A stretch of DNA of 38,838 nt from Bigelowiella natans CCMP2755 (GCA_000320545.1 ADNK01002937.1:1-38838), one strand, 5' to 3'. Positions 8,508-38,838 are shown, counted from the stretch's first letter. The notes: generated from the letters alone by a model not told the origin. Numbers and translations: made by a program.

Positions 8508-8966
8508 GTTAGTCCGTGACAATCAGCCCCATCGCCGTGGCCATCCTGAACCCATCACTGATCTGGACGCGCACAGGGTGTGCGCGACTACCGGAGGGTT
8601 CCCACACCATCTACTCGCATATCGTGCTAAGACCGTGATTTCGATCTGTCTCGAGCACAAAATGGCCTGTATATTCACGGATTTCTTCCTTCCTCTCTTT
8701 ACCGAACGTCTCGTCGAAAAGAAAATAGCGGGAACAGTGGCCGATCAGTGGGTGCGCAGGCGCTGTCCTGCGCTTTGTATCGTTATCTAGATTTTTTAGT
8801 TGTTTTCCGTTGTCGCGCATACAAAACTGCCTTGATGGCTTCAAATATTCGGGTTTCCGAAGATCTACGACGGCACACGTTGATCGAAGAACGAGCACCG
8901 ATCTTCCATAATCCAAAGCGCCGCACCGGCCTAGCCTCTCGTCTATCTATCTTCGCATTTCCAATC

Positions 8967-10043
8967 ATGTCCACGGAACAGAAGAAGCTGCGCATCTGCA
9001 TCGGCGGCGGTGGGGGGTTCATCGGCGGAAACCTCGCCCGTCGTCTCCACAACGAAGGACATCACGTTGTGTGCGCCGATTGGAAACGCAATGAGTACAT
9101 GGAAGAGAAGGAATTCTGCTCGGAGTTTCATCTTGTTGACCTTCGCAATTACGAGAACTGCATCAAGGCAACGAAGGGCTGTGATGAGGTCTACAATCTT
9201 GCGGCAGATATGGGAGGAATGGGCTTCATTCAATCCAACCACTCTGTCATCCTCTACAATAACACCATGATCTCCTTCAACATGATGGAAGCTGCTCGTG
9301 TCAACAAGGTTGGCCTGTTCTTCTACTCTTCCTCTGCATGCATCTACCCCGAATTCAAGCAGACTGAAGATGAGATCGTTGGGCTTAAGGAGTCAGATGG
9401 TTGGCCTGCTCAGCCGCAAGACGCATACGGCCTTGAGAAGCTGGTCTCTGAAGAACTCGCTATTCACTATGAGAAGGACTTCGGCATGAAATGCCGCATT
9501 GCTCGCTTCCACAATATTTATGGACCTTTTGGAACTTGGAAGGGAGGCCGGGAAAAAGCCCCTGCTGCTTTTTGTCGCAAGGCTCTGACCTCCACGAAGG
9601 ACTTTGAAGTCTGGGGAAACGGAAAGCAGACTCGTTCCTTCTGCTACGTCGACGACTGTGTTGAGGGAATCCTTCGTATCGCTCACTCCGATTACACCAA
9701 GCCTATCAACCTCGGTTCCGACGTTGCTATTAGCATGAACGGCATGGCTAAGCTTTGCATGAAACTCGCTGGAAAAGAAATCCCAATCCGCAACATTCCT
9801 GGTCCTGAGGGGGTTCGTGGTCGCAACAGTGACAACACGCTGATAAAGAAGGTGCTGGGATGGGCACCTAGTATCACTCTTGAGGATGGTCTCGGCCGTA
9901 CAATCAAGTGGATCAAGGGCCAGATCGAGAAGCTTCCTGAAGAAGAAAAGGCGAAGCTTACTTCCTCTGTGATTGTGAAGCAAGAAGACGCCATGAAACA
10001 AAATGCAGCTTGCGCGGCCGCTACTACTAAAGGATCTAACTAA
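8967..10043 (+). CDS. GME: GDP-mannose 3',5'-epimerase (extended SDR family), intronless
   Basis: Motifs GGGGFIGG, VYNLAADMGGMGFIQSNHSVILYNNTMISFNM, FYSSSACIYPE, catalytic AYGLEK (YxxxK), RFHNIYGPFGTWKGGREKAPAAFCRK and GPEGVRGRNSDNTLI match known GME signatures. First ATG at 8967. Confidence 0.97.
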   Translation: MSTEQKKLRICIGGGGGFIGGNLARRLHNEGHHVVCADWKRNEYMEEKEFCSEFHLVDLRNYENCIKATKGCDEVYNLAADMGGMGFIQSNHSVILYNNTMISFNMMEAARVNKVGLFFYSSSACIYPEFKQTEDEIVGLKESDGWPAQPQDAYGLEKLVSEELAIHYEKDFGMKCRIARFHNIYGPFGTWKGGREKAPAAFCRKALTSTKDFEVWGNGKQTRSFCYVDDCVEGILRIAHSDYTKPINLGSDVAISMNGMAKLCMKLAGKEIPIRNIPGPEGVRGRNSDNTLIKKVLGWAPSITLEDGLGRTIKWIKGQIEKLPEEEKAKLTSSVIVKQEDAMKQNAACAAATTKGSN

Positions 10044-10429
10044 CTAGGTCCGATGTACTAAAAAATTTCTGCACGCATTTCATGCATCAATTATAAATAT
10101 TTAGAGTGGATATTGCTACTTACGTTCATGTATAGGCTATGATATGTTCTGCGCTGCTAATGTCGTCCTGACCTAGTAGTTGCTAAGGGTTGCATGTATT
10201 GATAGCAGCATGACACATGCAAATTGTGTAGATAAAGCTCTCACGGCAGGCTGGCGTTACTTGATGCGAACTCTAGGCTAAAAGCTGCTTAGTTTGTTCC
10301 GTTTCTAAATAAAATACGAATGGCATACGTGCTACATGCTAGCATGGTTTAGAACATGAATGAACAAATTTTAACAGCATATGATTTATTAACAGTTAAA
10401 ACAGTCTGCAAATTATAACAAAACAGACT

Positions 10430-13400
10430 TTAATCATGAAGCAATGGAGTAGCTTCGCTTTTCTGATCCGCTATTTCTAAAATGCTGATTCTACGTTTTT
10501 GCTCACCGTCACCTATTTTTTCATCATCAATGACAAATTCGGGATCTTTTGGTACTTCTTTCAAAGGATTTCCTACATCTAGACGCATGCACGGCTGCTC
10601 CCACATGTGTAATTTACGTGAAAGGTTCAGAAACTCTGTCACTTTTTGTTGCGGTCGTTCAGAGTCCAAGTTTGCAGCATTTGACAATGTCATGCTTAAA
10701 TCCGTCATCAACTGACCGAACGTTGTAGTCAAGTGAGAACTATACAACCATGTTACGATTGGAAGCGGAAATAAGAGAAATTGTTGCATATATCCGAACT
10801 TTAATCCAAGAATAATCATCAGCGAACTTTGTGCTAGCACCAACCCGTGCAGCATGAACTTTATTATTACCGGCCAGAACATGCCTGTTAACACCAATTC
10901 ATCTGAATCAGTTTTCGATGTCTATTGAATGAAAGAATAATCCAGATACCTACCATATGTTTCGAATGAGGGCGTATGGACGTAAAGCAGCTGATACTTT
11001 TGAATGAGGTAATCGAAGGAAAAATATATTGTAGCGAATGGTAGAATAATTGGAGCCACAGTTGAGTAGCAGCATGAAATCGTGAAGATCAGACATCCAA
11101 ATGCAAGATAGGTTCCGTATTGGAAATAATAGGGCTTCATTGCCTCTCGTAGCTCATAGTCAACATCAGCCATGGACTGTCAATTTTGTATGAATCATGG
11201 AATAACTTAGTGAATTATCGATACTCATCCCTAATAGTTTACCGCAAATATTATGGTGAGGAATAACTTTCCCATCCGAATTAGTTTCTGTGCGTTCACA
11301 GCTAGTCCCTATATATGAAATCATAGATGAATCCAAAACTTGAAATTTTGCAAATAAATGCCATTACTTGAAGCATCATATATTGGATCATCACGGCTGA
11401 AACCTGAGGAACCTCAGCACCAAGAAGCTGCCAGGGAATATGTAGTTGTACAGTTGATATTTGGCATGGTGTCAGTATAGTTATTTGCTCTGGAGATATC
11501 ATTCTCATCGTTCAACCTCGAAAGTTTTCAAAGGCCGCTTAATTGCATCTTGTATAACAGAGAATACTGAACTGTTGATATGAAACAAGAAAGGATTTGA
11601 ACTAGCAATTAAATGAAACGCGAGATTTTACCTTGATATAAGCGTAACAAAATATATGTTCACGAGAAGAAATACATAATACGTTCCAAAGTATTCGATC
11701 TCCAACTGGCTCCCTGATAAAACAAGCAGACATGCTAAACATGTGGCAAACCTTCCCCGAAATGTTTACCTTCGGCAACCCCAGTTTTATAGATAATTCC
11801 ACGAATTATAGGCTGAAAACGTTATGGGATATTTCGTCCAGATCTGAAATGTTACTAGAACGCTACCTGGACGAGGATCATTATGACTACACGCCAAAGT
11901 GTAGGGCCAAATCCCTCAATAAGGGCTTTACCCTAATATAATATTTTTCCCAAAAGTCATAGCTCTTTCCAATAGACAATAGTTGCGTTGATTACAGAGC
12001 TGGGAAGCTGTGCAAGAGGCTCCATCGCTGGGTACGTATTGGCTGATGGCATCATGGCTAATAAAAACTCGACCTCAATAATCACATGGAAGGTTCACCC
12101 AAAGCATCCACGTCTGAGAGAGCGCCACCAAGTGCAACCTGGGTTTGTAGAGAGAGGCGGATTATGTCAGCTTTGGATTGTGTCACACTTCCCAATCGTT
12201 ACCGGAATAGCCCAGAAGATTATAAGAGCAACCAGAGCAACATAGGATGTAGAGCTCATCACATTCATTTGTGCTTTGCTTGGAATGTTGCACATATTTT
12301 CCCTGCAAAAACAAAATTAGGGTATAGCCATCCGACATTCTAAAGGGCTGAACCATAAAATATCACGGGGCTTAGGAGCAGGCTTAACCTATTCACGCAC
12401 AAATATGAATCCATCCGTAACAGAAATTTAAAAGAATTAACAATTCCACAAATATCAAACGCTGCAGTCTCGATTATTGTTTGGTAAATAGTCATTCAAT
12501 TGCCTGCCAACTTGTTCCTTCAGTAAGTGTTGTATCCCTGTGATAAGATTGCTTAGATCGTTTGAAGAAAGATGATTAAATATTTATTATCAGAAATTAC
12601 GCTGCTTTTGTGGCGACAGTAATTAGTTTGAATGTAACAAAAGCTGCGTTGCAGAACTCTCCTTGATCTCGAACACTTGTTATCTTTTCTTGGAGTTCCT
12701 CAACTTTTTCTTCATGATATCTCTCAGATTCCACCTTAAATTGTTAATATTGATGCTGACATAGTTTAACAACGCTTTCAATTGTAAATTCAAAAACCTC
12801 CTCTCCAAAGCATCCGCAAAATCCGAGTTTTTCTGTGATTTTCCCCTTGCGGTCTTCATTTTTTTTCTTAGCCTTTAGCATGGCTAGATACTCCTATAAA
12901 CAAATGGATATACGAATATTTTGCAATTATTTCATTCACAAATGTCGAGAGAGAGAAAAAGTCCTTACCTTCTTCAGTTCTTCACAATCGAGTCTCATGC
13001 TCTCCCTGTTATAAACAGGTGACACAAAGGCAACCTGACCAGGATATAGCCGGTCGAGGAACTTCTTGATCAACTCCGCAGTGTTATGTGACTCTGGTAT
13101 CCGATATATCATTACCTTGGATGTATAACTAATCTTAAATAATACATACTTCCACTTAATTGTTAGCCTGTTATATTCTTGGCACTTACGGTATAGTGAC
13201 TGCTTCCGCCTGTTTTCATAGATCTTCTTCGCAAATCAAGTATTGTAAGATAGTTGCTGTATGTGAATATCATGCTGATTATGGTCGCGATCCACATAAC
13301 GATTGCTGGTGCCTGAGATAGATTCTAGAAGTGTAATCTCAACCATACACGGAGTAACATTAGACACTATTTTGCGCCTCCTTTAAGTACCCATAGAAAA

Positions 13401-14119
13401 TCACTCGATTGTGAGATGTTCGCCAAGGTGAGCTTGGAAAGGCCTACATCAGCGAAAATAAATACTCCAGTCTTCAGAAACATATGATGTTGAACCCTGT
13501 TCTCCTTTTTTTCCTTGAGAAAATATTGGAACTAATATGACTAGGCCAATAAAACTATATGTGCCGACACATAAACACATCATCAGAGTCGGTGATGTAA
13601 AATTTCATAACTTCTTCATCACACCTGAGAATGGTCATGATGGTAGCAGCCATCCTGATGAAATGCAAATAAACTACTGCATCCATTCCAGACCTTTTAC
13701 GTAACACATCAACTTTCAATTACTTGAATATCACTTATGGATTCAGTAACATAGTAACAGAGATTGTTTGATATCAGACTTCCGTAGAACTTCTTCCTCT
13801 GGCATTTTCCACACTCCATACACCCAAGAAAAGACACGCTAGAATATAATTAATGACAATAGATTTCAGAGAACTACACTGACTCCGTACTCCGCATACG
13901 TACATCGAAGTATTAAGCATTAAAAAGTCCGACCTGAAAAGGGTAGGTTCCTTCGCCCCCTTTCCACCTCGGCGCAAAGAATCCCGGAAAGTAGCCTCGT
14001 AGAAGCTCGAACACGACGACATAGGCAAGGGCAGACAGCACTGCTGGAATGAGAACAGACACGGTAGCTGCATCGTCATCTTCGGGAGGGCTCGAGGGCG
14101 CTGCGGCACTAACCATCAT
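10430..14119 (-). CDS. OSCA/CSC1/TMEM63 (ERD4-like) osmo/mechanosensitive cation channel, many short introns
   Basis: N-terminal TM segment VLSALAYVVVFELLRGYFPGFFAPR. Internal exon SGMDAVVYLHFIRMA matches the GLDA-type motif. The RSN1_7TM C-terminal region reads FQYGTYLAFGCLIFTISCCYSTVAPIILPFATIYFSFDYLIQKYQLLYVHTPSFETYG|MFWP. Stop at 10430. Confidence 0.92.
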
Positions 14120-15095: not shown

Positions 15096-18000
15096 CTACA
15101 CTAAAAGTCTTAATAAAGAAAATCTCTGGATAATTGCGTGCGTCGGCTGTTTTAAAGCCGCTGCTTTTTGATCTAACGTTCATAGCTAATCGCGATGGAT
15201 GCTAATCGCCATTCTCACCTAGCCACATGAGCCCTTTCGAATTTTGGAATTTTACTGAAGCCCAGAATACCCTCTTGCATCAGCCACGGATCTAAAGACT
15301 GCGAAGCACAAAGTAGAGAAATTCGATCATGCAATGCGCGATTCATAAGGCAAGTGAAGGAAGAAACAAAAAACGGAAAGAATGAAAGTGAGGTCCAACC
15401 TGCGCAGAGCTGATTCCTCCGCCGAATGCCAGTCTTCGATCTAGCCTCCCAGCCACCATTCCACCGCCACTGCTACTGGTAGCTTTGAAAGCTCTCACGA
15501 TTGGATCTGACGTCGGCAAAGCACCTTCTAACGTGGGCAGCATACGTCCTATGTAGTCACGCATTCTACTAGTCTTTGGCACCGCACGTTTCGCACTCGT
15601 TTCGACCGCCGACGCTGACGCCGACAGCTTGCTGCTAGCGCTGCTCGCGCCCCCGCCAGCAGCAGCGCTCCTACTTCTTTTCACGCCGCCGCTACCGCCG
15701 CTTCGACGTGCCGAGCTGTAAAGACGTGAGATTGCATGGATCCATCCCAATAATCTGTGGAAGACGGGTGAGTAGTTTCTCCGACGTTCCAGCACTAGTG
15801 GTGCCAGAAGTCCTTCATCCTCCTCCTCCTCCTCCTCCTCCTCCTCCTCCTCGGAGCTCCATGGGCGGCGTCGATTGTGATGACGAGATGGTACTTTTAC
15901 ATGGATTATTTTGAGAGACGCCAGCTTGGCTATGGACCCCAGCACCTTCGCTACTAGGCTTTCTGGTAGTGCAGCCGTCTCTGTTGTTAGCTTCTTCGGC
16001 CCAAAGCGCAGCAGCAAGCTCCCAACAGCAGCTACGTGCGCCTCCACCACCCATTGTACCTTTGGTAAAAAATACGATACGACAGTGATCAGTACACTAG
16101 CAGCATTACAACGAACGATGACGACGACGACGATAATGGCAACAGCGACGCGACGAAGGACAGCGTGCACACATCATCCCCTACCGCTCTCGAGGCGTTT
16201 GCGCTGAGGAAGAGGAATTTGCGGTGACGGCGAGCTGATGGCGCCGTTACTTTTTCCGAGGAGAGCGATGGGAGGGGGGGCCGTCCGGTGTTAGGGGTAT
16301 CATCAGGCCCTTTCTGATGTTGTTGTGGTGGTGATTGTTGTTGTTGTTGTTGTTGCTGCTGCTGCTGCTGATCCTGTAGAGCTGCAGGCGAACAGGGGTT
16401 AGTGTGAGGGGTGTGGGCTGCTCGAGGCGTATGAGGCGTGGACGGTGTACTAGGGGAAGTGGTTGTAGCAGTAGCACCGACGGTACTAGAAGGTCTTCTA
16501 TCCTCTCCTCTTGCTCCCCCATCTCTTCCCTTTGTTCTTCCTCTCGTTTTGCCGTCCTCTTCCTCGGAGAGCATCGTCAGCAGCTTCTCAAGGAGCTTTG
16601 CCAACAGCGTCACGTGTTCTCGGATCATACGAGGGTTAAGGCGCTGCTCTTGCCGCTGCTGCCTCCCCAAGGGGGATGAGGAGGAGGCAGAGGGAGGAGA
16701 GGGCGATGGCGACGGCGAGGGGGGGGACACAGGCAATGATGGTGGATGCGATGATGATAAAGAGGTCATGGATTCTGCTCTTGGCAGTGAGGAGGAAGGG
16801 GGAGGAGGACGGGCTGATGATGATGATGACGATGAGGAGGATAGGGATTGAAGATCTGCTTGACCAATCGATGCTAGAATAAACGACGAAATAGCGCGAC
16901 AGCTGTCTGGTGGCTGATTCATGTGCCATTCAAAGGCTCGGTCGGCAGCGTCTAAGTATCCTGAGAGGCTATCAACATCATCATCATCGTCGTCGCCCCT
17001 CGCCTTCTTCCCTTCTTCATCCTCCTGGTCAGCAGCGTTAGCAGCAGCAGCACCAGTCGTCTCAACCTGCATCGCCGAGCCGCCATTCTTGCTCTCATCA
17101 CCGCCTGCGGCTGCTGCACACTTCTTCGTCCTGCTGCTGATAATCGCTGGCGGTGCCGTCGCTTTGGCAAGGCTGTCGAGGGATTCGCAGATGGAGCTTT
17201 GATATGCAGTCAGCGCCATGGGAAGGACCTGTTCGTGAGGACGAAGAAACCATAGCAATATGGTGGGTGGATAAGGAATCATCGTGAAAAGATATCAGCG
17301 GTGCCATCGTCATGCCCCACCACCTCCTCCTCTCCTAACAGCTGCGCGGGAGGACATATAACGTCTCCTTATCCTCTACCCCCCCATCCCCATCGTCATC
17401 CCATCATAATAACAACAATCATCACCATCGCCATCATCATCAATAGCACACGACGCACACAGCGAAGGACGACGTGATCGCACCTGATCCATGAAGCGGT
17501 AGGCAAGGCCCGGAACGAACATCAGATAAAGCACACCCACGTCTATCCCGCCCCCCCCTCCTCCTCGACCGCCACGCAGCTGCTCTGCTGTGGTGGTGGT
17601 GGTAGTAACACCGAAGTCGTTCCTATTAAAGGAGGAGGAGGAGGAGGGCAAAGGGAGCAATAGAAGCTCCGCCTGTAGGCTGCTGAGCAATTTGTTACTG
17701 GTGCTTAGATATGTAGCACTATCCCTTCCTCCCCCTCCCCGATCTTCGTCATCGTCGCTGCAAGCGGAGCCATTCAAGTTTCGAGTGGCCGCAACCACTT
17801 TCTCAACGCTGGCCACAAGGCACTGATGAAGCACGTCCCAATGCGAGTGCTGCTGCTTTCGGATCCTCCCCCGTCCACCTCTTCTATCACTATGACTTAC
17901 AATACCACCACCACCACTACTATTTCTTCTATGCTGATCATCATTTTCATTATTGCCACTGCTTTTATGGAGACCATCGCCGCCTCCCCGCTGCTGCTCT

Positions 18001-20438
18001 ACTCGCCCCAGCAGGCAGCATCCGCCGGGCACCATTCGCTGCAGTACGCGGAGGAAGTGCAGCCTGTGCTCGTGCGACTTGAGCTGCCTTGCCACGGTGA
18101 GCCCCACCTCCTCTGGGGAGGCCACCCACTGCGCATAGAGCTCTTTGCGCATCATCATCATCATCGTCGTCGTCGTCGTCGTCCTCATCCGCACAGCAGT
18201 AGGCTCGAGGAGGAGCAGCTTTTTGGAGACCAGCTGGATGGTGATGTCTCGTAGGAGGTGGGGGTTGCACGAGAGCATCACTCGGAAGGCTCCCAGTGAG
18301 CAGCAGCAGCGGCGGCGGCGGCACAACGACAACGACAACGAGGAGGAGGAGGAGGAGGAGGAGGAGGAAGAACCAGCACCAACGCCATCAAACTCTGGGT
18401 AGCTCTGCTGCTGATGCTGCGTTGAGGGGGGGAGGGGGAGAGGAGTCGTGAACAAAAAACGCGCCATTTGTAGCCATAAGGAGGAGGAGTAGGGGGAGGA
18501 ATTAGGGGTGTGTGATGATGATGACGATGATGATGGTGGTGGTGGTAGTGGTGGTGATGCCGTCGATAAGGAGGAACTACTGGCGTTATTTGTTTGCGGC
18601 TCTTCTGTTGATTTGGATGCAGACGCCCTCTCTTCTCTGCCTCTATCTCCGCCGCCATGAGAAATGTGGTTCCCGCCGTTCGGCCTCCCTCCCCTCCCGG
18701 TCGTATTCGTCGTCGTCGCAATGAGTGCCTCTTTGATTGGGTTGAGCACGAATGAGGGCTTTATGATCGAGTACTGGACCATAGTCGCTATCATGATGAT
18801 GATATACCGATCGCTTTCCCAAACATTGCGGCTGCTCATTGCTTCTTCAATGATCCGCCGCCCTGCTACCGTCCAATCATCCGCACAACCGCTACGAGTG
18901 GTGGCGGGGGGGGGAGCGGCAGTCGTGCCCGCTGAAGATGCAGTATCACCAGCTGCAATGCCGGCTGCGAGCCGACCTTCCTCCCCCCGCCCTCCCTCCT
19001 TTTCTTTTTCGTCTCCTCCCTTCTTCTCTTTTGCTGCCGCAGCAGCTGCTGACGTCCCGCCAGAATGGTGGCCGGAATCAACTTTACCGAGGAGCATGCG
19101 AGGAATGAACACGGAGAGTGCGTATTGCCAGTGGGTGGTGGTGGTGGTGGTGGTGGCAGAAGTGGTAGTAGAGGTAGTAGGAGTCGTGGAAGTGGTAGCA
19201 GCAGCTGCAGAGCTGGCAGCTGAAGGATCCGCAGCAGCCGTGGCTGGTGCTAGCGACGAGGTCGGTGCCGATGTCGATGCGCCGCCGCAACCGCCGCCGC
19301 CGCCGCCGCCGCCGCCGTTCCGCCCCCAGCGCTCTATCAACGCCTCCGCAATCATCACGAGGGCGCGGATCCGATGGACGCACAGCCAGTGCTCGTAGTT
19401 GGCGAGCCTGAAGACAGACCCGGCGTTTATGGCCGATGCGAGGAGCGCTGCTAGCGCGACTGCTTGGCACTCGTTGACGAGGCGGCCGTTCACGGGGCTG
19501 CTGGCAGCTGCTGCGTTGTCGCTCCCGGGATCGGGGCTAGGGGCGGCGGTGGCGGCGAAGGAGACGATGTGTTCGATCATGACGTTGGCCTTGGCCATTG
19601 AGGAAGAGAGGTCTCTCAGGTCTCTAGCACTGAGAACCTGGTAGAGCAAGTGCTGGTAAAGCTGATCCGCAGCCTGTTCCAGCGTCTTGCCCAGTGGGGA
19701 GGAGGAGGGGGAGGAGGAGGAGGAGGAGGAGGAAACAGTAGCACCAGAAACTAGCGGTGAGGAGATGGATGATGGTGGCTGCATCTGCTGCATTCCTCCC
19801 TCGCCACCTCCTCCTACCCCTTCGGGTGAAAGCGGCTTCGGTGGCGATGGCGAGGGGGGGGAGGAGGGGGGTTGGATGACGATGTCGGGTGTCTCAGGTA
19901 CTGCGGGGGAGGACGTTGACATCTTCTTCGCTGGGAAAGACGAGGAGCTTGAATTGTGCCGTATGGTGGCAGTCGAAGACTCTTTCCTCTCTGGCTGCTG
20001 CTGCTGCTGCTGCTGCTGCTGTTTCTCATCCAGATAATCGCTGCTATGCTGCTTCGGTATCACCGTGCTCTTTGTCTTCTTCTTCCTCATCATCTTCATC
20101 ACCTGCTGCTGGAGTTTCAGCTGTTTCGAGACAGCGCCGACCGCCTTGCCGTTGGCAAGATTTTCATGCAGCAGAGATGCTAGCCTGCTGTGCTTGCACA
20201 CACGCATGCGAAGCAGCCACCGATTACCCAGCACTCTGCGGTCCTTTCGGGTGGTAAATCCAGGCTGTTTTTCCGACGCGACGGATGCGCTCAGCAGAAC
20301 GTTGTGCGCACACGCCATCACGATTGCGCCCGTGGTTTTCGGATTGCTTGATAGAATCATCCAGTATCTGAGCAGCATTGAGCAGAAGGCAGCACCAGCA
20401 CGTGTTTTTTATGACGATTAGTAGGATGATGATGATGG

Positions 20439-32815: not shown

Positions 32816-32903
32816 TTCAAAATTATCGAAGCAAATTATTAAATTTTTGAAACGCGCAAAATATTTCTTCGGCGTTCTTAACAGCAGCGGTTTCCCGCCA
32901 AAA
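32816..32903. promoter_or_regulatory. Candidate cell-cycle promoter elements: E2F site plus two CHR-like hexamers
   Basis: TTTCCCGC(CAAA) at 32891-32902 fits the E2F consensus TTTSSCGC. TTTGAA at 32846-32851 and TTCAAA at 32816-32821 match the CHR hexamer. All lie upstream of the cyclin-containing gene. Confidence 0.5.
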
Positions 32904-33174
32904 TAAATTTCCGCACAGTAGTCAATTACGTCTCGGAACACCATTTACCCAGGAAATGAAGGTCGATTCTCTACAAACTGAGCGAGATTGGGTTGATCGG
33001 GTACAGAATCGCGGTCCGCTTCTTCTTCTCGAGAAACGATGTGAAATGATTTGTGTTCCTGGAGGTGCGACAACCTTTTTTTTATGTCGCAAGTACCTAG
33101 TAAAACGCCACATTTTTTCGACGCTCAAAAGGGAAAGGGAGGGGCGGGCAAAAAGAGAGCCTAACTCGTTGGGT

Positions 33175-33580
33175 ATGTCATCTCCATCTGGCCGCAAGCG
33201 TGGACGCTCCACCTACGATGAAAGCGCAGCCGGAAACAATGGCGACGAAAATGCTCGCGAGGAGAACGCAGTTAGATGCAATAACGAGGAGGGAGCGGGC
33301 GGCGGGTCCATGCCGACGGGAGGCGGACAAGCTGTGGCCGCTGGTGACGGAGTAGAAGGGCCATCATCATCGTCATCATCATCATTATCGAACCGTCAAC
33401 AACGAAAGAGACAGAGAATAGAAGGGAAAACAGGGGTGGCGGACAATCAAAGTAGAAGTCCAATGGATGATGACAACGACGATGTTAAAGTACAGTCCGG
33501 AGAAGATCTCTATCACCCCATTGAGGTAATAGATTAAGAATCAGCTGAATCTTCGCCGCATTTTCCAGTGCTCTCAATGC

Positions 33581-33636
<56 letters not shown>

Positions 33637-33692
33637 TAACCCCCCTTCTCATTAATCTGATATATATATACATGTGTATAAATGAAAAAAAA

Positions 33693-33735
<43 letters not shown>

Positions 33736-34158
33736 ATATGTATATATGTATATATCAGAGCAAAGACGCAAAAGAGTACAAGGAACATCAGCACTTTTGC
33801 ATTTCGCACAAAGTCGAGAGACTGAGGCCCAAGGAAAAGCAAGGGGTAAGTGATTGCGACATTCTAGTGCCAGTCATCACGTCTCCGCCCACCCGCTCCC
33901 CTGTCCCTCTTTGCCCCTCTTCAGTCCTTCTATTTACTGACCAAAACAGCACTCGTTCCTCTTTCTCACCTCTCATCGCTATTTGCAATCATGATAGTTA
34001 CGATGATTACGTTGTTGCGCCTTCTACTGTTTCAGCTTCTTTTAGCAAAGCCCGGGTTCAATTACGAGACCAAGGATTTGAGCCAGGGTGACGAGATCTG
34101 CACTTATTGAATACCTCATTTCTGCACGTTTTTGACTAGTAGCAAGCGTTGTTATCTC

Positions 34159-34193
<35 letters not shown>

Positions 34194-34307
34194 CATTCCT
34201 CCTTGATTACTCACCTCCCCTTTCCTTGTACATAGGGACTTGTGTGTCATTCCTTCCAGAAGCCCAATTATGGCTTAACATTGAAGGGCCGTACAGGTTG
34301 AGTGTGC

Positions 34308-34343
<36 letters not shown>

Positions 34344-35302
34344 ACTTGTATGTATGATGACACCCACGTGTCTTATGTATTGGAATTTCCCGTGCGCTTT
34401 GTGGGTTATCAATCCACATATGCTGAATGTAAATGAAACACATATGTGGCGCCACCTTCAGGGCTGCTAAGGCGGAGATGGATGACGAGAAAGACCGATC
34501 CATGATTCTTTGGAGCAATGTAACAAATATGGACATGGAAAGCAAGAATGAGATTAGTAGTAACTTTTTGGTTGTTGTTTCTCTTTCCAACGTTCCACTA
34601 CACCCACCCCCTGCACGCGCCTTTTTTGTCTCTATCAATTGGGGAGGATGATGATGAAATAAATGAAAATACTCTTTCTTCCTTTCCTCAGGAGAAGTTC
34701 ATGCCTGTGCAGATAAAGGACTATACGAGGTAACTTCTTAAACAATACAAGCTTCCACAGTTCCTCCCCCCCCCCCCCCCCTTCTGCTCCCGTCGTTACA
34801 AACTCAAAGTCTGTGCGTGACCGTAAACCTCCTCCTCCTCTTCCAGCTCCCCCTTTTCCTAATTGTCATCAACCAAAACCCTGCAGCACTAAGGACTATC
34901 TGAAAGAAGCTTGGGTGTACCAAATGCTCTTCATCATGAAGGCCTTCCATAAGATGGGCCGTCCGTTCCAGAATATTATCCTCCCTCAGGTAGCTCCTCG
35001 ACGAAAACACAATAATAATCAAATTAGCTTTCTGCCCGCTCTCCTTTCCCCTCTTTCCCCTCCTCCTCCTCCTTGTACGTGGCCTCTTTTCGAAGTACTC
35101 ATTGCAGCGCGCGCGGGGGGGGGCGGCCTAACACAGGTAATGATGACTGGAGGGTACAGCAATGCTACGAGGCGTTATCTGATGATGAAGAATCAGTACT
35201 GTGTCCCTTCACAGCTGTCGCTTCTCTGTAACGACCTCATGAGACTTGGAAACTTCTTCCCTGAAGTAAGTGGAGAAAGAAATTCCTCGAGCGTATGCAT
35301 GG

Positions 35303-35345
<43 letters not shown>

Positions 35346-36114
35346 GTTTGCTATTAGCAGCAGCAGCAGCATCATCATCATCATCATCATCATCACCAGC
35401 AGTAGTAGTGGTAGAATTCGTAGGTTTCTTTTTCAAAGCAATGATGCTGCGCTGCCATGCTGCTAAGAGCTTCAGTGGGGAGAAATTGGAGATCCTTGGA
35501 AACGAGAAATAGAGAGAGAGGGAGGGAGAGAGAGAGAGAGGATGGCGGGAGTGATTGCGGGAGAATTCTAATGGACGGCGATAATGACACAACCGATTAG
35601 GGCGTGAGTTTATTGAGTAAGACCCCACCAGAAGATCTCCTCGGAGACACGAAGCCCAACCCCACAAAGGACCTCTGGAAGGCTGCACTTCTGGTGCGAA
35701 CGAAGGAATGAATGATGACCAGAGAATACTTCGCTCTCCCTCGTCGCAGATGATTCACACACACGCGCGCGCGCGCACACACACACACACACATGCGTTT
35801 GTCCGTGCTGATGAGAAGATAAGAAACTTGACACATTCCTTCCCCGCTGAAACATTACTCCTCCCACTGCGGCTGCTAAACAGATCTACGAGCTTTACAG
35901 CGGGAGTGCCCTTGTGAGAGACGAGGAGACAGACAGCCAATTTGCCCACCTCATGCGCATATTCAAGTTCCTCGGCACGCCAAACGAGAGGACCTGGCCG
36001 GGGGTCACTATGCTCCCGCACTACAATCAGCAATATCCGCAGGTAGCAATCCTGGGAGAGAGAGAGCTCTCGCTGGTCTCCTGCCTCAATAGATGTTTCA
36101 TTGTCTTGCCGTCG

Positions 36115-36148
<34 letters not shown>

Positions 36149-38562
36149 TATACTATCGATCATCCAAAGGAAAGAGAAAGTATGATCGCCGTGTGTACCG
36201 CTCACTCCTCAACCCCTCCCCCCCCCCCCCCTCCCCGATCAATGTCGGTCTCAGTGGAAAGTCTCCCCCGTGAAGCTGGACGCGAAGGTTCCTAAACAGG
36301 TGCAATCTCTTGTCACGAAGCTACTCGTTCTGGACCCAAAGAAGCGCCAAAGCGCCGAAAAGGTGCTCAAGACGGCCGATTTCTTCAATCAAGTTAGATC
36401 GCACTTGGGGAGGCGCCGCGGAAGAACAGCAGGTGGGTGTGCGCTTCTTGCTCTCGTTTTCTTTTTATATCTTCGCTATGATCGCGCTTCGTCTCTGTGC
36501 GATGATGTTTGTCATCTCTCTTCGTTCTGTCTGCTATACTATACGTCTCCTTTTCGCACACAACTGCCCTCCCTTGAAGAGAAGGCTGGTTGTTTAGCAC
36601 TTCACCCCCTCTCCCCTCCCCCCTTCTGCCTATTTGCGTATTGACCTATTTAGTATTTCATCATCCTCATCATCATGATCATCATTATCATCATGATTAT
36701 CTTCATCTTCATCATCATCATTCGTATATCGTCGTCACCGTCTGCAGGCCCGGAATGGGAGGAGGTCGATCTGATCACAGACAAGGAGGGGGATTTCAGC
36801 ATCGAGGGCAACATTATCATGCTACTGGAGAAGGAGGAGATCCCCGTCTCCGCCCCGAAGAAGAAGAAGAAGAAGAAGAAGAAGAAGCAACAGCGCTGTG
36901 AGCAGAAGAAGGACGACGGAGGGGAGGTGGGGGGGAGGGCAGCTCAAAAGGAGAACAATCCAACCGGCGACCACCACCACCCCCCTCCCTCCTCAGCTGT
37001 TCTTTTGGCCAGGTCGCGCCCGACGATAGAGATCTCACCCTCCAGCAGCAGCAACAGTAGCATGGAAATAGTAGAAGATGGGGACGGGGGGGGGACGAAG
37101 AGGAGGCGAAGAGGAAATGACAACTACAACACAAACAGCAGCAGCAGTACCAACACCAACACCAACAGCAATACCAACAGAACGGAAGGCTCTTCGCCGC
37201 CAAAGCGGCCATCGTCATCATCATCACCGCCATCCTCCTCGTCATCATCGCCATCATCGTCCTCGTCCCCCCTGCCCTCACAAGCAGCAGCAGCAGCAGC
37301 ATCTTCTGGGGTGTGGGGGGTGGAGCAGCGCAATATCGACTTAACGAAGCGGAGAACCCTCGTGGACTGGCTGTTGGAATTCTGTCGGGTGAGGAAGCTT
37401 TCACAAGATACGCTCTTCCTCGGCATCAGCCTTCTTGACACGTACATGACGAAGACGCCCAACCTAGACCTCTCCAAATTCCAGATGATCGGAGAGGTAC
37501 CGTGGGAATGGGGGGGGGGGAGGTAGGGGGGAGGAGGGGAGGGAGTATTCTGTTGTCATTTTGCCTCGAACGTCAATTATGTGAAATATGCACGCTATCA
37601 CCACCACCACCATCATCATTCTCATCATCATTCCCATTCTCACCAATAAGCATGGTTTGCTTCCGCGTCATCGTCGTCGTTGCCGTTGTCGGCGTGTCCT
37701 CCTCCTCCTCCTCCTACTGCTGCTGGTGGCGGTGGTAGGTTGCGGTATTCGTCGCTTCCAAGGTGGTGGATAAGAACCGACTTACTCTAGATGAGCTGGC
37801 GGATATTCCTGAGGAGTGCTACGAGGTGAGGGAGGTGCGGCACATGGAGCGCGAGCTGCTCAAGACCTGCGAGATCGGCAAGATCAACATCATCACCCCC
37901 CTCTACTTCATGCGCTGCTTCTTCGGGCTCATCCACGCCGACAGCGACTGCGGCTGCTTCCAGACGGAGTGCCTGGCCTTCTGGCTGCTGGAGATGTTCA
38001 TCACCCACTTCTCCACGAAACGGTACCGCGCCTCCACCGTGGCGCTCTCCGCCCTGACGCTCGCCCTCACGGGGCGGGCCGACGTCAACCACCCCTCGGA
38101 GATGCTGGTGGTCACGCCACCCGCTTTTCCCAAGAATGGACCTTACAGCAGCAGCAGCAGCAGCAGCAGCAGTTGGGTGGCGCTGCGGGATATAGCGACA
38201 ACCATTCAAAACAAGGCGAAGCGAGACTACAATGAATGCATACAAGGACTATACCAGACGTGGAAGACCTATGCGCGAGGGCCTAGAGGTGGGTGCTTAG
38301 TAACGTGTTACAGCGGGGGGGGGGGGGGAGGAGGCAGGATCTGTGATTGTCCCATGTGTTTGGGTGGTGTATCATGCTTGGCTGTCTCTCTCTTTTCTCT
38401 CTCCCTCCCTCCCTCTTTCTCTCTATTCTCCTCCCCTTACTACCCCTGCGAACACCTCCAAGGGGACAAATGGCAGATGTTCGCACGGCGGGAGCAGAAG
38501 GCGAGCTACCATTGGGAGAAGTACAGCAAGCCTACATACGCAACTGTTGCTGGTAGTAGTAT

Positions 38563-38593
<31 letters not shown>

Positions 38594-38838
38594 CAGTCGA
38601 ATTCGTGGAATAATTCTATGATGGCGACGGTGGCGACGCAACAACAATAACAACAACAACATCAACAAACACAGCTTTGTTGCTGCTTGTGACGTAATCA
38701 TATCGTGGACATCGTCATCTATTATCAGCTCTTCGCCTGAGGACTTGCTACAAAAACTAATGCCGAAAAAAGGTGATGAACTCCGACGACGAAGGCGTAA
38801 TGCTGCCGATATGCCTACACACCAAGAAATCAGCAAAA
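33175..38838 (+). CDS. Putative fusion of a CDK-like pseudokinase domain and an A/B-type cyclin; probably continues beyond the window
   Basis: Likely start MSSPSGRKRGR at 33175 (an in-frame ATG also exists at 32956). Kinase C-lobe exons: YLKEAWVYQMLFIMKAFHKMGRPFQNIILPQ, TPPEDLLGDTKPNPTKDLWKAALL, IYELYSGSALVRDEETDSQFAHLMRIFKFLGTPNERTWPGVTMLPHYNQQYPQ and WKVSP...LVTKLLVLDPKKRQSAEKVLKTADFF. A phase-1 intron at 36433-36747 leads into the exon carrying the cyclin box RRTLVDWLLEFCRVRKLSQDTLFLGISLLDTYM...KFQMIGE|VAVFVASKV...MERELLK...TPLYFMRCF, and later EKYSKPTYATVA. Confidence 0.8.
33586..33755. repeat. (GT)n and (TA)n microsatellites in the first intron of the CDK-cyclin gene
   Basis: Dinucleotide runs are directly visible. 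Confidence 0.95.

What the first reader, a model, noticed from the sequence alone, without database searches (positions are those of the whole stretch)
33175..38838. CDK-like domain and cyclin apparently encoded as one polypeptide
Seen in the sequence: the last kinase exon (36255-36432) has no stop and ends at a phase-1 GT. The next AG (36746-36747) continues in the same phase into an exon with a poly-K stretch, a Ser/Pro-rich linker and an A/B-type cyclin box. The 315-nt gap looks like the other introns (pyrimidine and CAT microsatellite) and lacks the TGCA/CATG/GCTAG-rich signature found after gene 3' ends in this window. Established: CDKs and cyclins are normally separate genes so that cyclin turnover gates kinase activity. 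Inference: this is a natural CDK-cyclin chimaera, possibly an undescribed cell-cycle regulator.
Basis: partly seen in the sequence, partly recalled or inferred. Interest (0 to 1): 0.9.

Follow-up and report, generated by a model that had tools for sequence, protein, structure and literature searches.

The report
Dead CDK–cyclin fused to F-box receptor
The splice joining the kinase-like exons to the cyclin exons is real, but the kinase part is catalytically dead and the gene continues into an F-box and leucine-rich repeats, so it is most likely a ubiquitin-ligase adaptor carrying a built-in CDK–cyclin look-alike, not a self-activating kinase.

Summary
Observation confirmed. RNA-derived contigs from three separate studies remove the 315-nt intron 36433-36747 exactly. 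One 2.5-kb contig runs from the 5' UTR through all eleven kinase-like exons into the cyclin exons.

Interpretation partly right:
- The CDK-like domain has lost the glycine loop, the beta3 lysine, the HRD aspartate (now Asn) and DFG. It keeps a PSTAIRE-like helix and the CDK2-type C-lobe.
- The gene does not end in the window. A 100%-identical transcript contig continues over two assembly gaps into an F-box and FBXL-type leucine-rich repeats.
- Full-length orthologues with the order pseudokinase, cyclin, F-box, LRR occur in four other named chlorarachniophyte genera. They also occur as uninterrupted ORFs in unnamed environmental eukaryotes. One lineage adds a C-terminal CKS domain.
- Inactive CDKs with built-in cyclin domains were already described in Phytophthora (2010) and Stentor. 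I found no description of the F-box/LRR/CKS extension.

Most likely function (inferred): an SCF substrate receptor that uses a dead CDK–cyclin unit as bait. A first-reader note (s1-752891) reports a similar fusion elsewhere in this genome; my searches found no second copy.

The parts
33141..33174 (+). 5' UTR (the furthest upstream point reached by RNA contigs)
   Evidence: contigs begin at 33141 (X1), 33148 (X3) and 33175 (X2).
33175..33525 (+). Exon 1: ATG and a low-complexity N-terminal region of 117 aa
   Evidence: No Pfam hit. The junction to exon 2 is not listed, but the contig length fits it exactly.
33759..33845 (+). Exon 2: degenerate beta1/glycine-loop region of the pseudokinase
   Evidence: the glycine-loop motif GxGxxG is replaced by KEHQHF.
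34036..34087 (+). Exon 3: pseudokinase N-lobe (beta2-beta3; beta3 Lys lost)
   Evidence: Joints; alignment.
34236..34296 (+). Exon 4: PSTAIRE-like helix (reads ...FLPE... here; LRE in all 13 relatives aligned)
34462..34519 (+). Exon 5: pseudokinase N-lobe (beta4-beta5)
   Evidence: Joint 34519->34692. The acceptor is inferred; the contig length fits.
34692..34729 (+). Exon 6: hinge region
   Evidence: Joints.
34887..34989 (+). Exon 7: helix E and degenerate catalytic loop (HRDLKPQN replaced by FQNIILPQ; Asp->Asn)
   Evidence: The profile of the family matches here.
35137..35265 (+). Exon 8: inserted segment plus the family motif N-D-L-M-R-L-G-N in place of the DFG/activation segment
   Evidence: N, M, R and G are invariant in 13 sequences.
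35601..35693 (+). Exon 9: PPE (the APE motif) and the DxW motif
35884..36042 (+). Exon 10: C-lobe with the GDSEID-like DEETDS motif and the GTPxxxxWPGV motif
36255..36432 (+). Exon 11: last pseudokinase exon (helices H-I), no stop, ends in phase 1
   Evidence: (Pkinase profile 227-260/263, E 0.007).
36433..36747 (+). Intron 11 (315 nt, GT..AG): the junction in question
   Evidence: Removed in contigs of three runs. Contains an in-frame stop at 36642 if retained.
36748..37496 (+). Exon 12: poly-K, Ser/Pro-rich linker, first half of Cyclin_N (includes KRRTLVDW, the MRAIL-equivalent helix)
   Evidence: The X3 contig differs from the genome by a 9-nt gap within this exon.
37739..38288 (+). Exon 13: second half of Cyclin_N plus Cyclin_C
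38463..38552 (+). Exon 14: conserved segment after the cyclin box. The donor is at 38553, so the TAG at 38564 is intronic.
   Evidence: transcript contig L014 leaves the window at 38552.
38728..38772 (+). Diverged copy (83% nt identity) of the start of the true exon 15, with no RNA coverage. The true exon 15 lies in the assembly gap after the contig end.
   Evidence: blastn of L014 against the window; depth is 0 over 38651-38838.

Best explanation
This is one single-copy, 20-plus-exon gene of a chlorarachniophyte alga. Other agents' notes name the alga as Bigelowiella natans.

The protein has about 1,300 residues, in this order: a low-complexity N-terminus, a CDK-derived pseudokinase, a linker, a B/A-type cyclin box, an F-box and FBXL-type leucine-rich repeats.

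Shown: the exon structure, the splice, the domain order, the loss of every catalytic motif, and conservation of the whole architecture in other genera.

Inferred mechanism:
- The pseudokinase and the cyclin box pack against each other within the chain, like a CDK-cyclin dimer.
- The F-box docks on Skp1-Cullin-1.
- The protein then works as an SCF substrate receptor. Its bait is a kinase-dead CDK-cyclin surface (the cyclin docking groove plus the CDK C-lobe, which can hold a Cks subunit), together with the LRR arc.
- It would therefore capture proteins that normally dock on CDK-cyclin complexes, such as CDK inhibitors or RxL/Cy-motif and phospho-Thr-Pro proteins, and mark them for ubiquitination without phosphorylating them.

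In effect it would be a covalent version of the Skp2-Cks1-CDK2-cyclin A assembly, and an analogue of cyclin F.
For: Fusion transcript: one search shows the joint in three studies at equal depth on both sides, and one contig spans both parts.

Continuation of the gene: searches show that transcript contig L014, 100% identical to the genome, links window exons 13-14 to contig C799 and to nine exons on C798, ending ...IIIW. One search finds an F-box (E 9.6e-7) and LRRs in L014.

Conservation: one search finds Pkinase (C-lobe) + Cyclin_N + Cyclin_C + F-box + LRR in P0003, P0004, P0006, P0007, P0011 and P0015. name Lotharella, Amorphochlora, Norrisiella and Gymnochlora. Searches show uninterrupted ORFs on environmental or genomic contigs, which excludes a gene-model artefact. 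Searches show a single copy in this genome.

Dead kinase: searches (MAFFT against the alga's own PSTAIRE CDKA; an independent HMMER alignment to CDK1) show the G-loop, beta3 Lys, HRD Asp (now Asn or Ser), catalytic Lys and Asn, and DFG all lost. The xxLRE helix, APE, DxW and a DDETDS (GDSEID-like) motif are kept. One search gives CDK2 as best match for the C-lobe (E 3e-21).

Cyclin still looks able to bind a CDK: the best PDB matches are cyclin B1 (3e-15), A2 and cyclin F. Two invariant residues, K495 and E524 in P0003 numbering, lie in the cyclin box; from memory of cyclin A I take them to be its CDK-contacting Lys/Glu pair.

Intramolecular docking: AlphaFold2 on residues 1-680 of P0003 gives pTM 0.78 although 141 residues are disordered. 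Complex prediction, with the pseudokinase and the cyclin as separate chains, scores 0.37 against a best control of 0.01, graded 'weak support'. The runs agree in at least 58% of contacts and the partner pLDDT is at least 72.

Ligase link: one search gives FBXL2 (1e-39), FBXL17 and TIR1 as best matches, and Skp2 more weakly (1e-7). One search shows that P0015/P0032 carry a C-terminal CKS domain (E 4.5e-21). Searches show that the alga has CKS and Skp1 genes.
Against: - No interaction, substrate or ligase activity has been measured for any member.
- The docking support is weak by the tool's own calibration, and resemblance to solved CDK-cyclin complexes can inflate it.
- I could not inspect the coordinates of the model, so the geometry of the interface is unseen.
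- The LRR part is closer to FBXL2/FBXL17 than to Skp2, so the Skp2 analogy rests on architecture and the CKS fusion, not on orthology.
- The CKS part of P0015 did not fold in AlphaFold2 (pLDDT about 20-30).
- No CDI/KRP-type inhibitor was detected in the genome (inconclusive).
- This alga has Pro where all relatives have the Arg of the LRE helix motif.
- The F-box and part of the LRR region are missing from the genome assembly and are known only from a transcript contig that has an unresolved frame break.
Confidence: 0.5

Rival explanations
1. The cyclin box binds and activates a genuine CDK in trans. The fused pseudokinase acts as an autoinhibitory decoy that must be displaced. The F-box/LRR half either brings that active CDK to SCF substrates, so that the ligase writes its own phospho-degrons, or makes the cyclin destroy itself.
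For: The cyclin keeps an invariant Lys/Glu pair in its box. The genome has canonical PSTAIRE CDKs. In this alga the long flexible linker of about 180 residues would allow the pseudokinase to swing away. Docking support is only weak.
Against: The PSTAIRE-like helix and the whole C-lobe of the pseudokinase are strongly conserved, as expected if it stays bound. AlphaFold2 places the two domains confidently together (pTM 0.78). A covalently tethered partner has a very large advantage in effective concentration.
Confidence: 0.2
2. It is a non-degradative scaffold. The pseudokinase-cyclin unit sequesters CDK inhibitors, Cks or CDK substrates, or acts as a cyclin using a pseudokinase as scaffold, as suggested for Stentor. 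The F-box only binds Skp1 outside an SCF ligase.
For: The Stentor authors proposed a scaffold role for their pseudokinase-cyclin. From general knowledge, some F-box proteins act outside SCF complexes.
Against: F-box plus cysteine-type LRRs, with FBXL2 as best match at E 1e-39, is the standard SCF receptor module. It is conserved in every full-length member.
Confidence: 0.12
3. The N-terminal domain is an atypical but active kinase that uses non-canonical catalytic residues, so the protein is a self-activating CDK-cyclin.
For: From general knowledge, some kinases first called dead later proved active (WNK, CASK, haspin). An Asp or Glu is often present in the N-D-L-M-R-L-G motif.
Against: Five separate catalytic elements are missing at once. 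The acidic residue of the family motif is Arg or Gln in some members. Pfam recognises only the C-lobe.
Confidence: 0.05
4. These are two neighbouring genes joined only by occasional read-through splicing or by misassembly.
For: The reading frame would close at 36642 if the intron were retained. RNA contigs of X1 and X2 break inside exon 12.
Against: The spliced joint is seen in three studies at the same depth as the flanking exons. The contig breaks fall at the (AAG)n repeat, and one contig crosses it. Orthologues encode the same fusion as continuous ORFs, in transcripts and in intronless genomic contigs.
Confidence: 0.02

Closest known systems
CDKs with integral cyclin domains of oomycetes and ciliates (Phytophthora infestans PITG_21617 and three others, Judelson & Ah-Fong 2010, PMC3019232; Stentor SteCoe_2757, bioRxiv 10.1101/168187)
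   Same: An N-terminal CDK-like domain is followed by Cyclin_N and Cyclin_C in one polypeptide. The catalytic Asp of subdomain VIb is replaced by Asn. Some members keep a PSTAIRE-like helix. The organisms belong to the same supergroup (SAR).
   Different: Neither paper reports an F-box, LRR or CKS domain ('F-box' occurs nowhere in either text). I could not obtain their sequences, so common descent is untested. The ESM Atlas lists an oomycete Pkinase+Cyclin_N cluster as the nearest neighbour at a score of only 0.84-0.92.
Cyclin F (FBXO1), the SCF receptor with a cyclin box (PDB 9cb3; PMC12232547)
   Same: A cyclin box and an F-box sit in one protein. Its cyclin box recruits substrates for ubiquitination rather than activating a CDK. 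Cyclin F is among the best PDB matches of the cyclin part (E 1.8e-11).
   Different: In cyclin F the F-box lies N-terminal to the cyclin box, and there is no kinase-like domain and no LRR. Here the order is pseudokinase, cyclin, F-box, LRR. It is not a member of that family.
Skp2-Cks1-CDK2-cyclin A assembly on SCF (for example PDB 7b5l, 2ast, 7luo)
   Same: The same set of modules is present: an FBXL-type F-box/LRR receptor, a cyclin-CDK unit held N-terminal to the F-box, and Cks at the C-terminal end of the LRR. In P0015/P0032 the CKS domain is fused exactly there.
   Different: In animals these are four separate proteins and the CDK is active. Here they form one chain with a dead CDK. Sequence similarity of the LRR to Skp2 is weak (1e-7, against 1e-39 for FBXL2). 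In chlorarachniophytes Cks is not fused.
FBXL2 / FBXL17 / TIR1-type F-box LRR receptors
   Same: The F-box is followed by cysteine-containing LRRs. These are the best PDB matches of the C-terminal half.
   Different: None of them carries a cyclin or a kinase-like domain. The family here ends in a conserved ...IIIW tail, not the CaaX box of FBXL2.
Kinase-cyclin fusion clusters of giant viruses (Nucleocytoviricota; ESM Atlas clusters of 548-563 aa)
   Same: Pkinase plus Cyclin_N in one protein. These are the nearest Atlas clusters to the N-terminal half of P0007 (score 0.95).
   Different: A scan of IMG/VR with family-specific peptide patterns found no relative. The Atlas gives no alignment. No F-box or LRR is recorded for them.

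Membership tests
Active cyclin-dependent kinase (CMGC/CDK) | Glycine-rich loop GxGxxG and the beta3 (VAIK) lysine | tested here: not met
   the window reads KEHQHF at the loop and Asn at the Lys column. No family member keeps the loop.
Active cyclin-dependent kinase (CMGC/CDK) | Catalytic loop HRDLKPQN (Asp, Lys, Asn) and the DFG aspartate | tested here: not met
   the window has FQNIILPQ. HMMER against CDK1 gives Asp->Asn, Lys->Phe, Asn->Met and DFG Asp->Cys in P0015.
Active cyclin-dependent kinase (CMGC/CDK) | CDK-type fold, with a PSTAIRE-type helix and a CMGC C-lobe | tested here: met
   CDK2, E 3e-21 over the C-lobe; CDK1 residues 31-294; Foldseek top hits are all CDK2; xxLRE helix.
CDK with integral cyclin domain (Judelson & Ah-Fong 2010) | CDK-like domain followed by Cyclin_N/Cyclin_C in one confirmed transcript | tested here: met
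CDK with integral cyclin domain (Judelson & Ah-Fong 2010) | Asp->Asn in subdomain VIb | tested here: met
   Asn in the window and in 7 of 9 relatives; Ser in Amorphochlora. The Norrisiella transcript model is disrupted in this region.
CDK with integral cyclin domain (Judelson & Ah-Fong 2010) | Sequence-level homology to the oomycete and ciliate members | not testable with these tools
   No tool returned those sequences. The profile search found none, and the Atlas gives only a feature score.
A/B-type cyclin | Two cyclin folds (Cyclin_N and Cyclin_C), with nearest relatives among mitotic cyclins | tested here: met
   window exons; cyclin B1 3e-15, A2 3e-12. The part is very divergent: only 15 hits among 1.84 billion representatives.
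A/B-type cyclin | Activates a catalytically competent CDK partner | not testable with these tools
   The tethered partner is dead. Binding of a CDK in trans is untested.
FBXL-type SCF substrate receptor | F-box motif followed by C-terminal cysteine-type LRRs | tested here: met
   (this alga's transcript contig L014: F-box E 9.6e-7, LRR_4 1.4e-13). The F-box exon itself lies in an assembly gap.
FBXL-type SCF substrate receptor | Binds Skp1 and supports ubiquitination | not testable with these tools
   Skp1 genes exist in the genome. No interaction data.
Cyclin F (FBXO1) | F-box N-terminal to the cyclin box, no other recognition domain | tested here: not met
   the order here is cyclin then F-box, with extra pseudokinase and LRR domains.
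Skp2 (FBXL1) | Orthology of the LRR domain to Skp2 | tested here: not met
   Skp2 matches at E 1e-7 only, far behind FBXL2 (1e-39) and FBXL17 (3e-27).

The most novel reading that the evidence does not exclude
A natural single-chain version of the whole SCF-Skp2/Cks1/CDK2/cyclin A degron reader. The ubiquitin-ligase receptor looks to its substrates like an active CDK-cyclin(-Cks) complex but cannot phosphorylate them, so binding leads directly to destruction. It would be a hard-wired way to remove CDK inhibitors or CDK-docking proteins, conserved in chlorarachniophytes and in at least three unnamed marine or environmental eukaryote lineages, and possibly descended from the same ancestor as the oomycete and ciliate dead-CDK-cyclin proteins.
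Probability: 0.35. Interest if true: 0.8.

Novelty: new variant of a known kind. Interest (0 to 1): 0.6.

Why it matters
CDK, cyclin, Cks and the Skp2-type F-box protein are normally four separate proteins, and their regulated assembly drives the G1/S transition. Here evolution has joined three of them into one chain, and all four in one lineage, while killing the kinase.

If the inferred mechanism holds, three things follow:
- The CDK-cyclin surface can serve purely as a recognition module for a ubiquitin ligase.
- The function of the unexplained dead-CDK-cyclin proteins of oomycetes and ciliates becomes a testable question.
- The protein offers a compact natural scaffold for studying, or engineering, degron recognition by CDK-cyclin-Cks surfaces.

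It also corrects the gene model. The public fragments are annotated as 'Cyclin-dependent kinase 2 homolog' or 'Protein kinase domain-containing protein'.

Tried and rejected
- **Joined protein left out.** All window searches were exon by exon, by reference. Full-length statements rest on orthologue proteins and transcript contigs that the tools returned.
- **Raw RNA reads.** Run X21 gave only 4 reads on the stretch. Transcript ends, strand and the level of intron retention could not be measured. The moderate depth in the intron bin 36462-36660 falls on low-complexity repeats and is not interpretable.
- **The search for homologous proteins.** All three searches added only one member (Gymnochlora). 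No oomycete, ciliate or viral kinase-cyclin protein was retrieved, so common descent is untested.
- **IMG/VR scan.** No relative found.
- **JGI metagenome scan.** Of 37 loci, tblastn shows that nearly all match only the kinase C-lobe at 22-39% identity. They are ordinary CMGC kinases, not family members. Only L046 looks related.
- **AlphaFold2 of full-length P0015.** pTM 0.55, and the CKS part is unfolded (pLDDT 20-30). It says nothing about CKS docking. An alignment that included CKS rows misaligned them and was dropped.
- **Complex prediction.** Weak support only, and no interface was given.
- **CDI/KRP inhibitor domain.** No hit, but the control genomes gave none either, so this is uninformative.
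- **Second fusion in this genome (note s1-752891).** The profile and exon searches and a look at C2337 (an ordinary CDK) found no second locus with both parts.
- **Taxonomy of the unnamed contigs.** Unresolved. The Atlas gives a Chlorophyta Pkinase+F-box cluster at a score of 0.78, which is only a lead.

Full report
**The observation**

The exon 36255-36432 is open throughout, ends in phase 1 and is followed by GT. AG lies at 36746-47, and the next exon continues in phase into a poly-K run, a Ser/Pro-rich linker and a cyclin box. Read exon by exon, Pfam finds Cyclin_N split over 36748-37496 (E 1e-8) and 37739-38288 (E 2e-6), with Cyclin_C in the latter (E 1e-5). Pkinase appears only as a sub-threshold hit in the last kinase-like exon (E 0.007). 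The 315-nt gap is compositionally like the other twelve introns.

**RNA evidence**

Twenty public runs of one organism hold about 40% of the sampled words of the stretch. That is the exonic share. I laid Logan contigs of three runs from three studies on 32880-38838. Every intron is removed, so the contigs derive from RNA.

The joint 36432|36748 (GT..AG, skipping 315 nt) is present in all three runs. The shorter side is 103-177 nt, and depth is the same as in the flanking exons. One 2509-nt contig (X3 record 7) runs from 33148 to 38139 through all kinase-like and cyclin exons. The contig breaks in X1 and X2 fall at the (AAG)n repeat of exon 12.

The joints give 14 exons in the window, and the contig length fits the two junctions not listed in the output. 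The raw-read run yielded four reads only, so transcript ends and intron retention could not be measured.

**The gene is longer than the window**

The window is a whole contig (G000:C800). A phmmer search with exon 13 against 1.84 billion representatives gave only 15 hits. One of them, P0001, is 100% identical to the end of exon 13 and to exon 14, and then continues into an F-box and LRRs.

P0001 is encoded on a 1963-nt transcript contig, L014. That contig matches:
- window 38102-38289 and 38461-38552;
- then 184 nt that are absent from the assembly;
- then C799:256-342;
- then 464 nt that are absent from the assembly;
- then nine exons on C798, up to a stop after ...IIIW.

So exon 14 ends at 38552 and the TAG at 38564 is intronic. 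L014 has an unresolved frame break in its variable spacer. Window 38728-38772 is an 83%-identical, unexpressed copy of the start of the missing exon 15. The gene is single-copy.

The full-length picture comes from orthologues.

**The family**

The long hits share one architecture: pseudokinase (Pfam sees only the C-lobe), Cyclin_N, Cyclin_C, F-box, LRR.

Named members come from Lotharella globosa, Amorphochlora amoebiformis, Norrisiella sphaerica and Gymnochlora. Public names for them are 'Cyclin-dependent kinase 2 homolog' and 'Protein kinase domain-containing protein'.

Other members are unnamed. Some are transcript contigs (L013, L022). Others are uninterrupted ORFs on gene-dense contigs from metagenome assemblies and unlabelled sequencing runs (L015/L016, L017, L008). 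This rules out a gene-model artefact.

P0015 and P0032 add a C-terminal CKS domain (E 4.5e-21). P0011 has a RING/zinc-ribbon insert. A quick maximum-likelihood tree splits the chlorarachniophyte clade from the unnamed clade.

**The kinase part is dead**

I aligned the family to the alga's own PSTAIRE CDKA, a 299-aa ORF in L012. Every member, and the window exons, lack the glycine loop, the beta3 lysine, the HRD aspartate (Asn in most, Ser once), the catalytic Lys and Asn, and DFG. An independent HMMER alignment of P0015 to CDK1 gives the same substitutions.

These features are kept:
- a PSTAIRE-like helix (xxLRE; this alga alone has Pro for the Arg);
- APE and DxW;
- a strongly conserved DDETDS motif at the GDSEID position;
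- the GTPxxxWPGV region.

An invariant N-x-x-M-R-x-G motif replaces the DFG segment. The best solved relative is CDK2 (E 3e-21; Foldseek).

**The other parts**

The cyclin box is nearest to cyclin B1 (3e-15), then A2 and cyclin F. It keeps two invariant residues, K495 and E524 in P0003 numbering. From memory of cyclin A, these correspond to its CDK-contacting Lys/Glu pair. It also keeps an MRAIL-equivalent helix.

The C-terminal half is nearest to FBXL2 (1e-39), FBXL17 and TIR1. Skp2 matches only at 1e-7. The genome has three CKS loci and several Skp1 loci. No CDI domain was detected, which is uninformative.

**Structure predictions**

AlphaFold2 on residues 1-680 of P0003, with the 13-sequence family alignment, gives mean pLDDT 73 and pTM 0.78, although 141 residues are disordered. 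I read this as the two domains being placed confidently against each other, but I could not inspect the coordinates.

Complex prediction, with the pseudokinase and the cyclin as separate chains, scored 0.37 against a best control of 0.01. The tool grades this 'weak support'. At scores of 0.60 or under, only 5 of 78 solved complexes pass, and so did all 4 mismatched pairs that ever passed. The runs agree in at least 58% of contacts and the partner pLDDT is at least 72. Resemblance to solved CDK-cyclin complexes may inflate the score.

The full-length P0015 model was not informative for the CKS part.

**Prior art**

Judelson & Ah-Fong (2010, PMC3019232) described four Phytophthora infestans CDKs with C-terminal cyclin domains. 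They confirmed them by RT-PCR and noted that all carry Asp->Asn in subdomain VIb. They found relatives in other oomycetes, Paramecium, Tetrahymena and Theileria. [quoted passage not shown]

Neither text mentions an F-box. Searches for chlorarachniophyte/F-box/CDK and for related terms found no description of the extended architecture. The ESM Atlas lists oomycete and giant-virus Pkinase+Cyclin_N clusters as nearest neighbours. These are leads only, and a pattern scan of IMG/VR found no relative.

**Mechanism**

Shown: one expressed, conserved gene encodes a dead CDK-like domain, a cyclin box, an F-box and FBXL-type LRRs.

Inferred: the dead CDK and the cyclin form an intramolecular CDK-cyclin-like unit. 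The F-box docks on Skp1-Cullin. The unit, together with the LRR arc and a Cks subunit (fused in one lineage, presumably recruited in trans elsewhere), recognises proteins that dock on CDK-cyclin complexes and hands them to the ligase. This parallels cyclin F and the Skp2-Cks1-CDK2-cyclin A assembly, in which cyclin A is held by the part of Skp2 that lies N-terminal to the F-box and Cks1 by the C-terminal end of the LRR. That placement is from general knowledge; PDB entries 7luo and 7b5l appear.

I put about 0.9 on the architecture and about 0.5 on this mechanism. The rivals are given separately: activation of a CDK in trans, a non-degradative scaffold, an atypical active kinase, and two separate genes.

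**Verdict**

The CDK-cyclin fusion as such is known. Its union with an F-box/LRR receptor, and with CKS in one lineage, appears to be a new variant. It deserves experimental follow-up.

Noticed in passing
window 38553-38838; G000:C799 and G000:C798:1-2761: The window is a complete contig. The gene crosses two assembly gaps, of 184 nt and 464 nt of mRNA, and continues on C799 and then C798. The F-box exon is absent from the assembly.
   Followed up: yes
window 38728-38772: A diverged (83% nt identity) copy of the start of the missing exon 15 lies in the last intron-like stretch. It has no RNA coverage. It could be a decayed duplicated exon or contig-end misassembly.
   Followed up: partly
window 34236-34296 (exon 4): In the PSTAIRE-like helix this alga has Pro (FLPE) where all 13 aligned relatives have an invariant Arg (LRE). 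The RNA contigs agree with the genome here.
   Followed up: partly
window 36748-37496 (exon 12): The X3 RNA contig differs from the genome by a 9-nt gap inside exon 12. This is an in-frame length difference between strains or alleles, not localised further. The linker here (about 180 aa) is much longer than in the orthologues.
   Followed up: no
L012:862-1761 (G000:C1061): The alga's canonical PSTAIRE CDKA is encoded as an uninterrupted 299-aa ORF, unusual in this intron-rich genome. A second canonical CDK with introns lies at G000:C2337, near 108.7-109.9 kb.
   Followed up: partly
window 17379-20378 (- strand) and 10000-14000: A 1000-aa uninterrupted ORF in a 59-62% GC patch has no Pfam hit. 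It sits next to a 4-kb stretch of only 38-40% GC. Neither was explained.
   Followed up: partly
window 8748-10040 (+): An uninterrupted 431-aa ORF encodes an NAD-dependent epimerase/dehydratase (Pfam Epimerase, E 7e-45).
   Followed up: no
P0011/P0026 (L015:3086-6406): One environmental lineage carries a RING/zinc-ribbon-like insert of about 70 residues inside the pseudokinase C-lobe. That would add a second possible E3 element to the same chain.
   Followed up: no
P0024 (Norrisiella), residues about 150-215: The catalytic-loop region is replaced by unrelated sequence in this transcript model. This may be a frameshift or a retained intron in the MMETSP assembly.
   Followed up: no
L014:640-890: The transcript contig of this alga changes reading frame in the variable spacer between the first LRRs and the main LRR block. 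This could be a retained intron or an assembly error. The genomic sequence is missing.
   Followed up: partly
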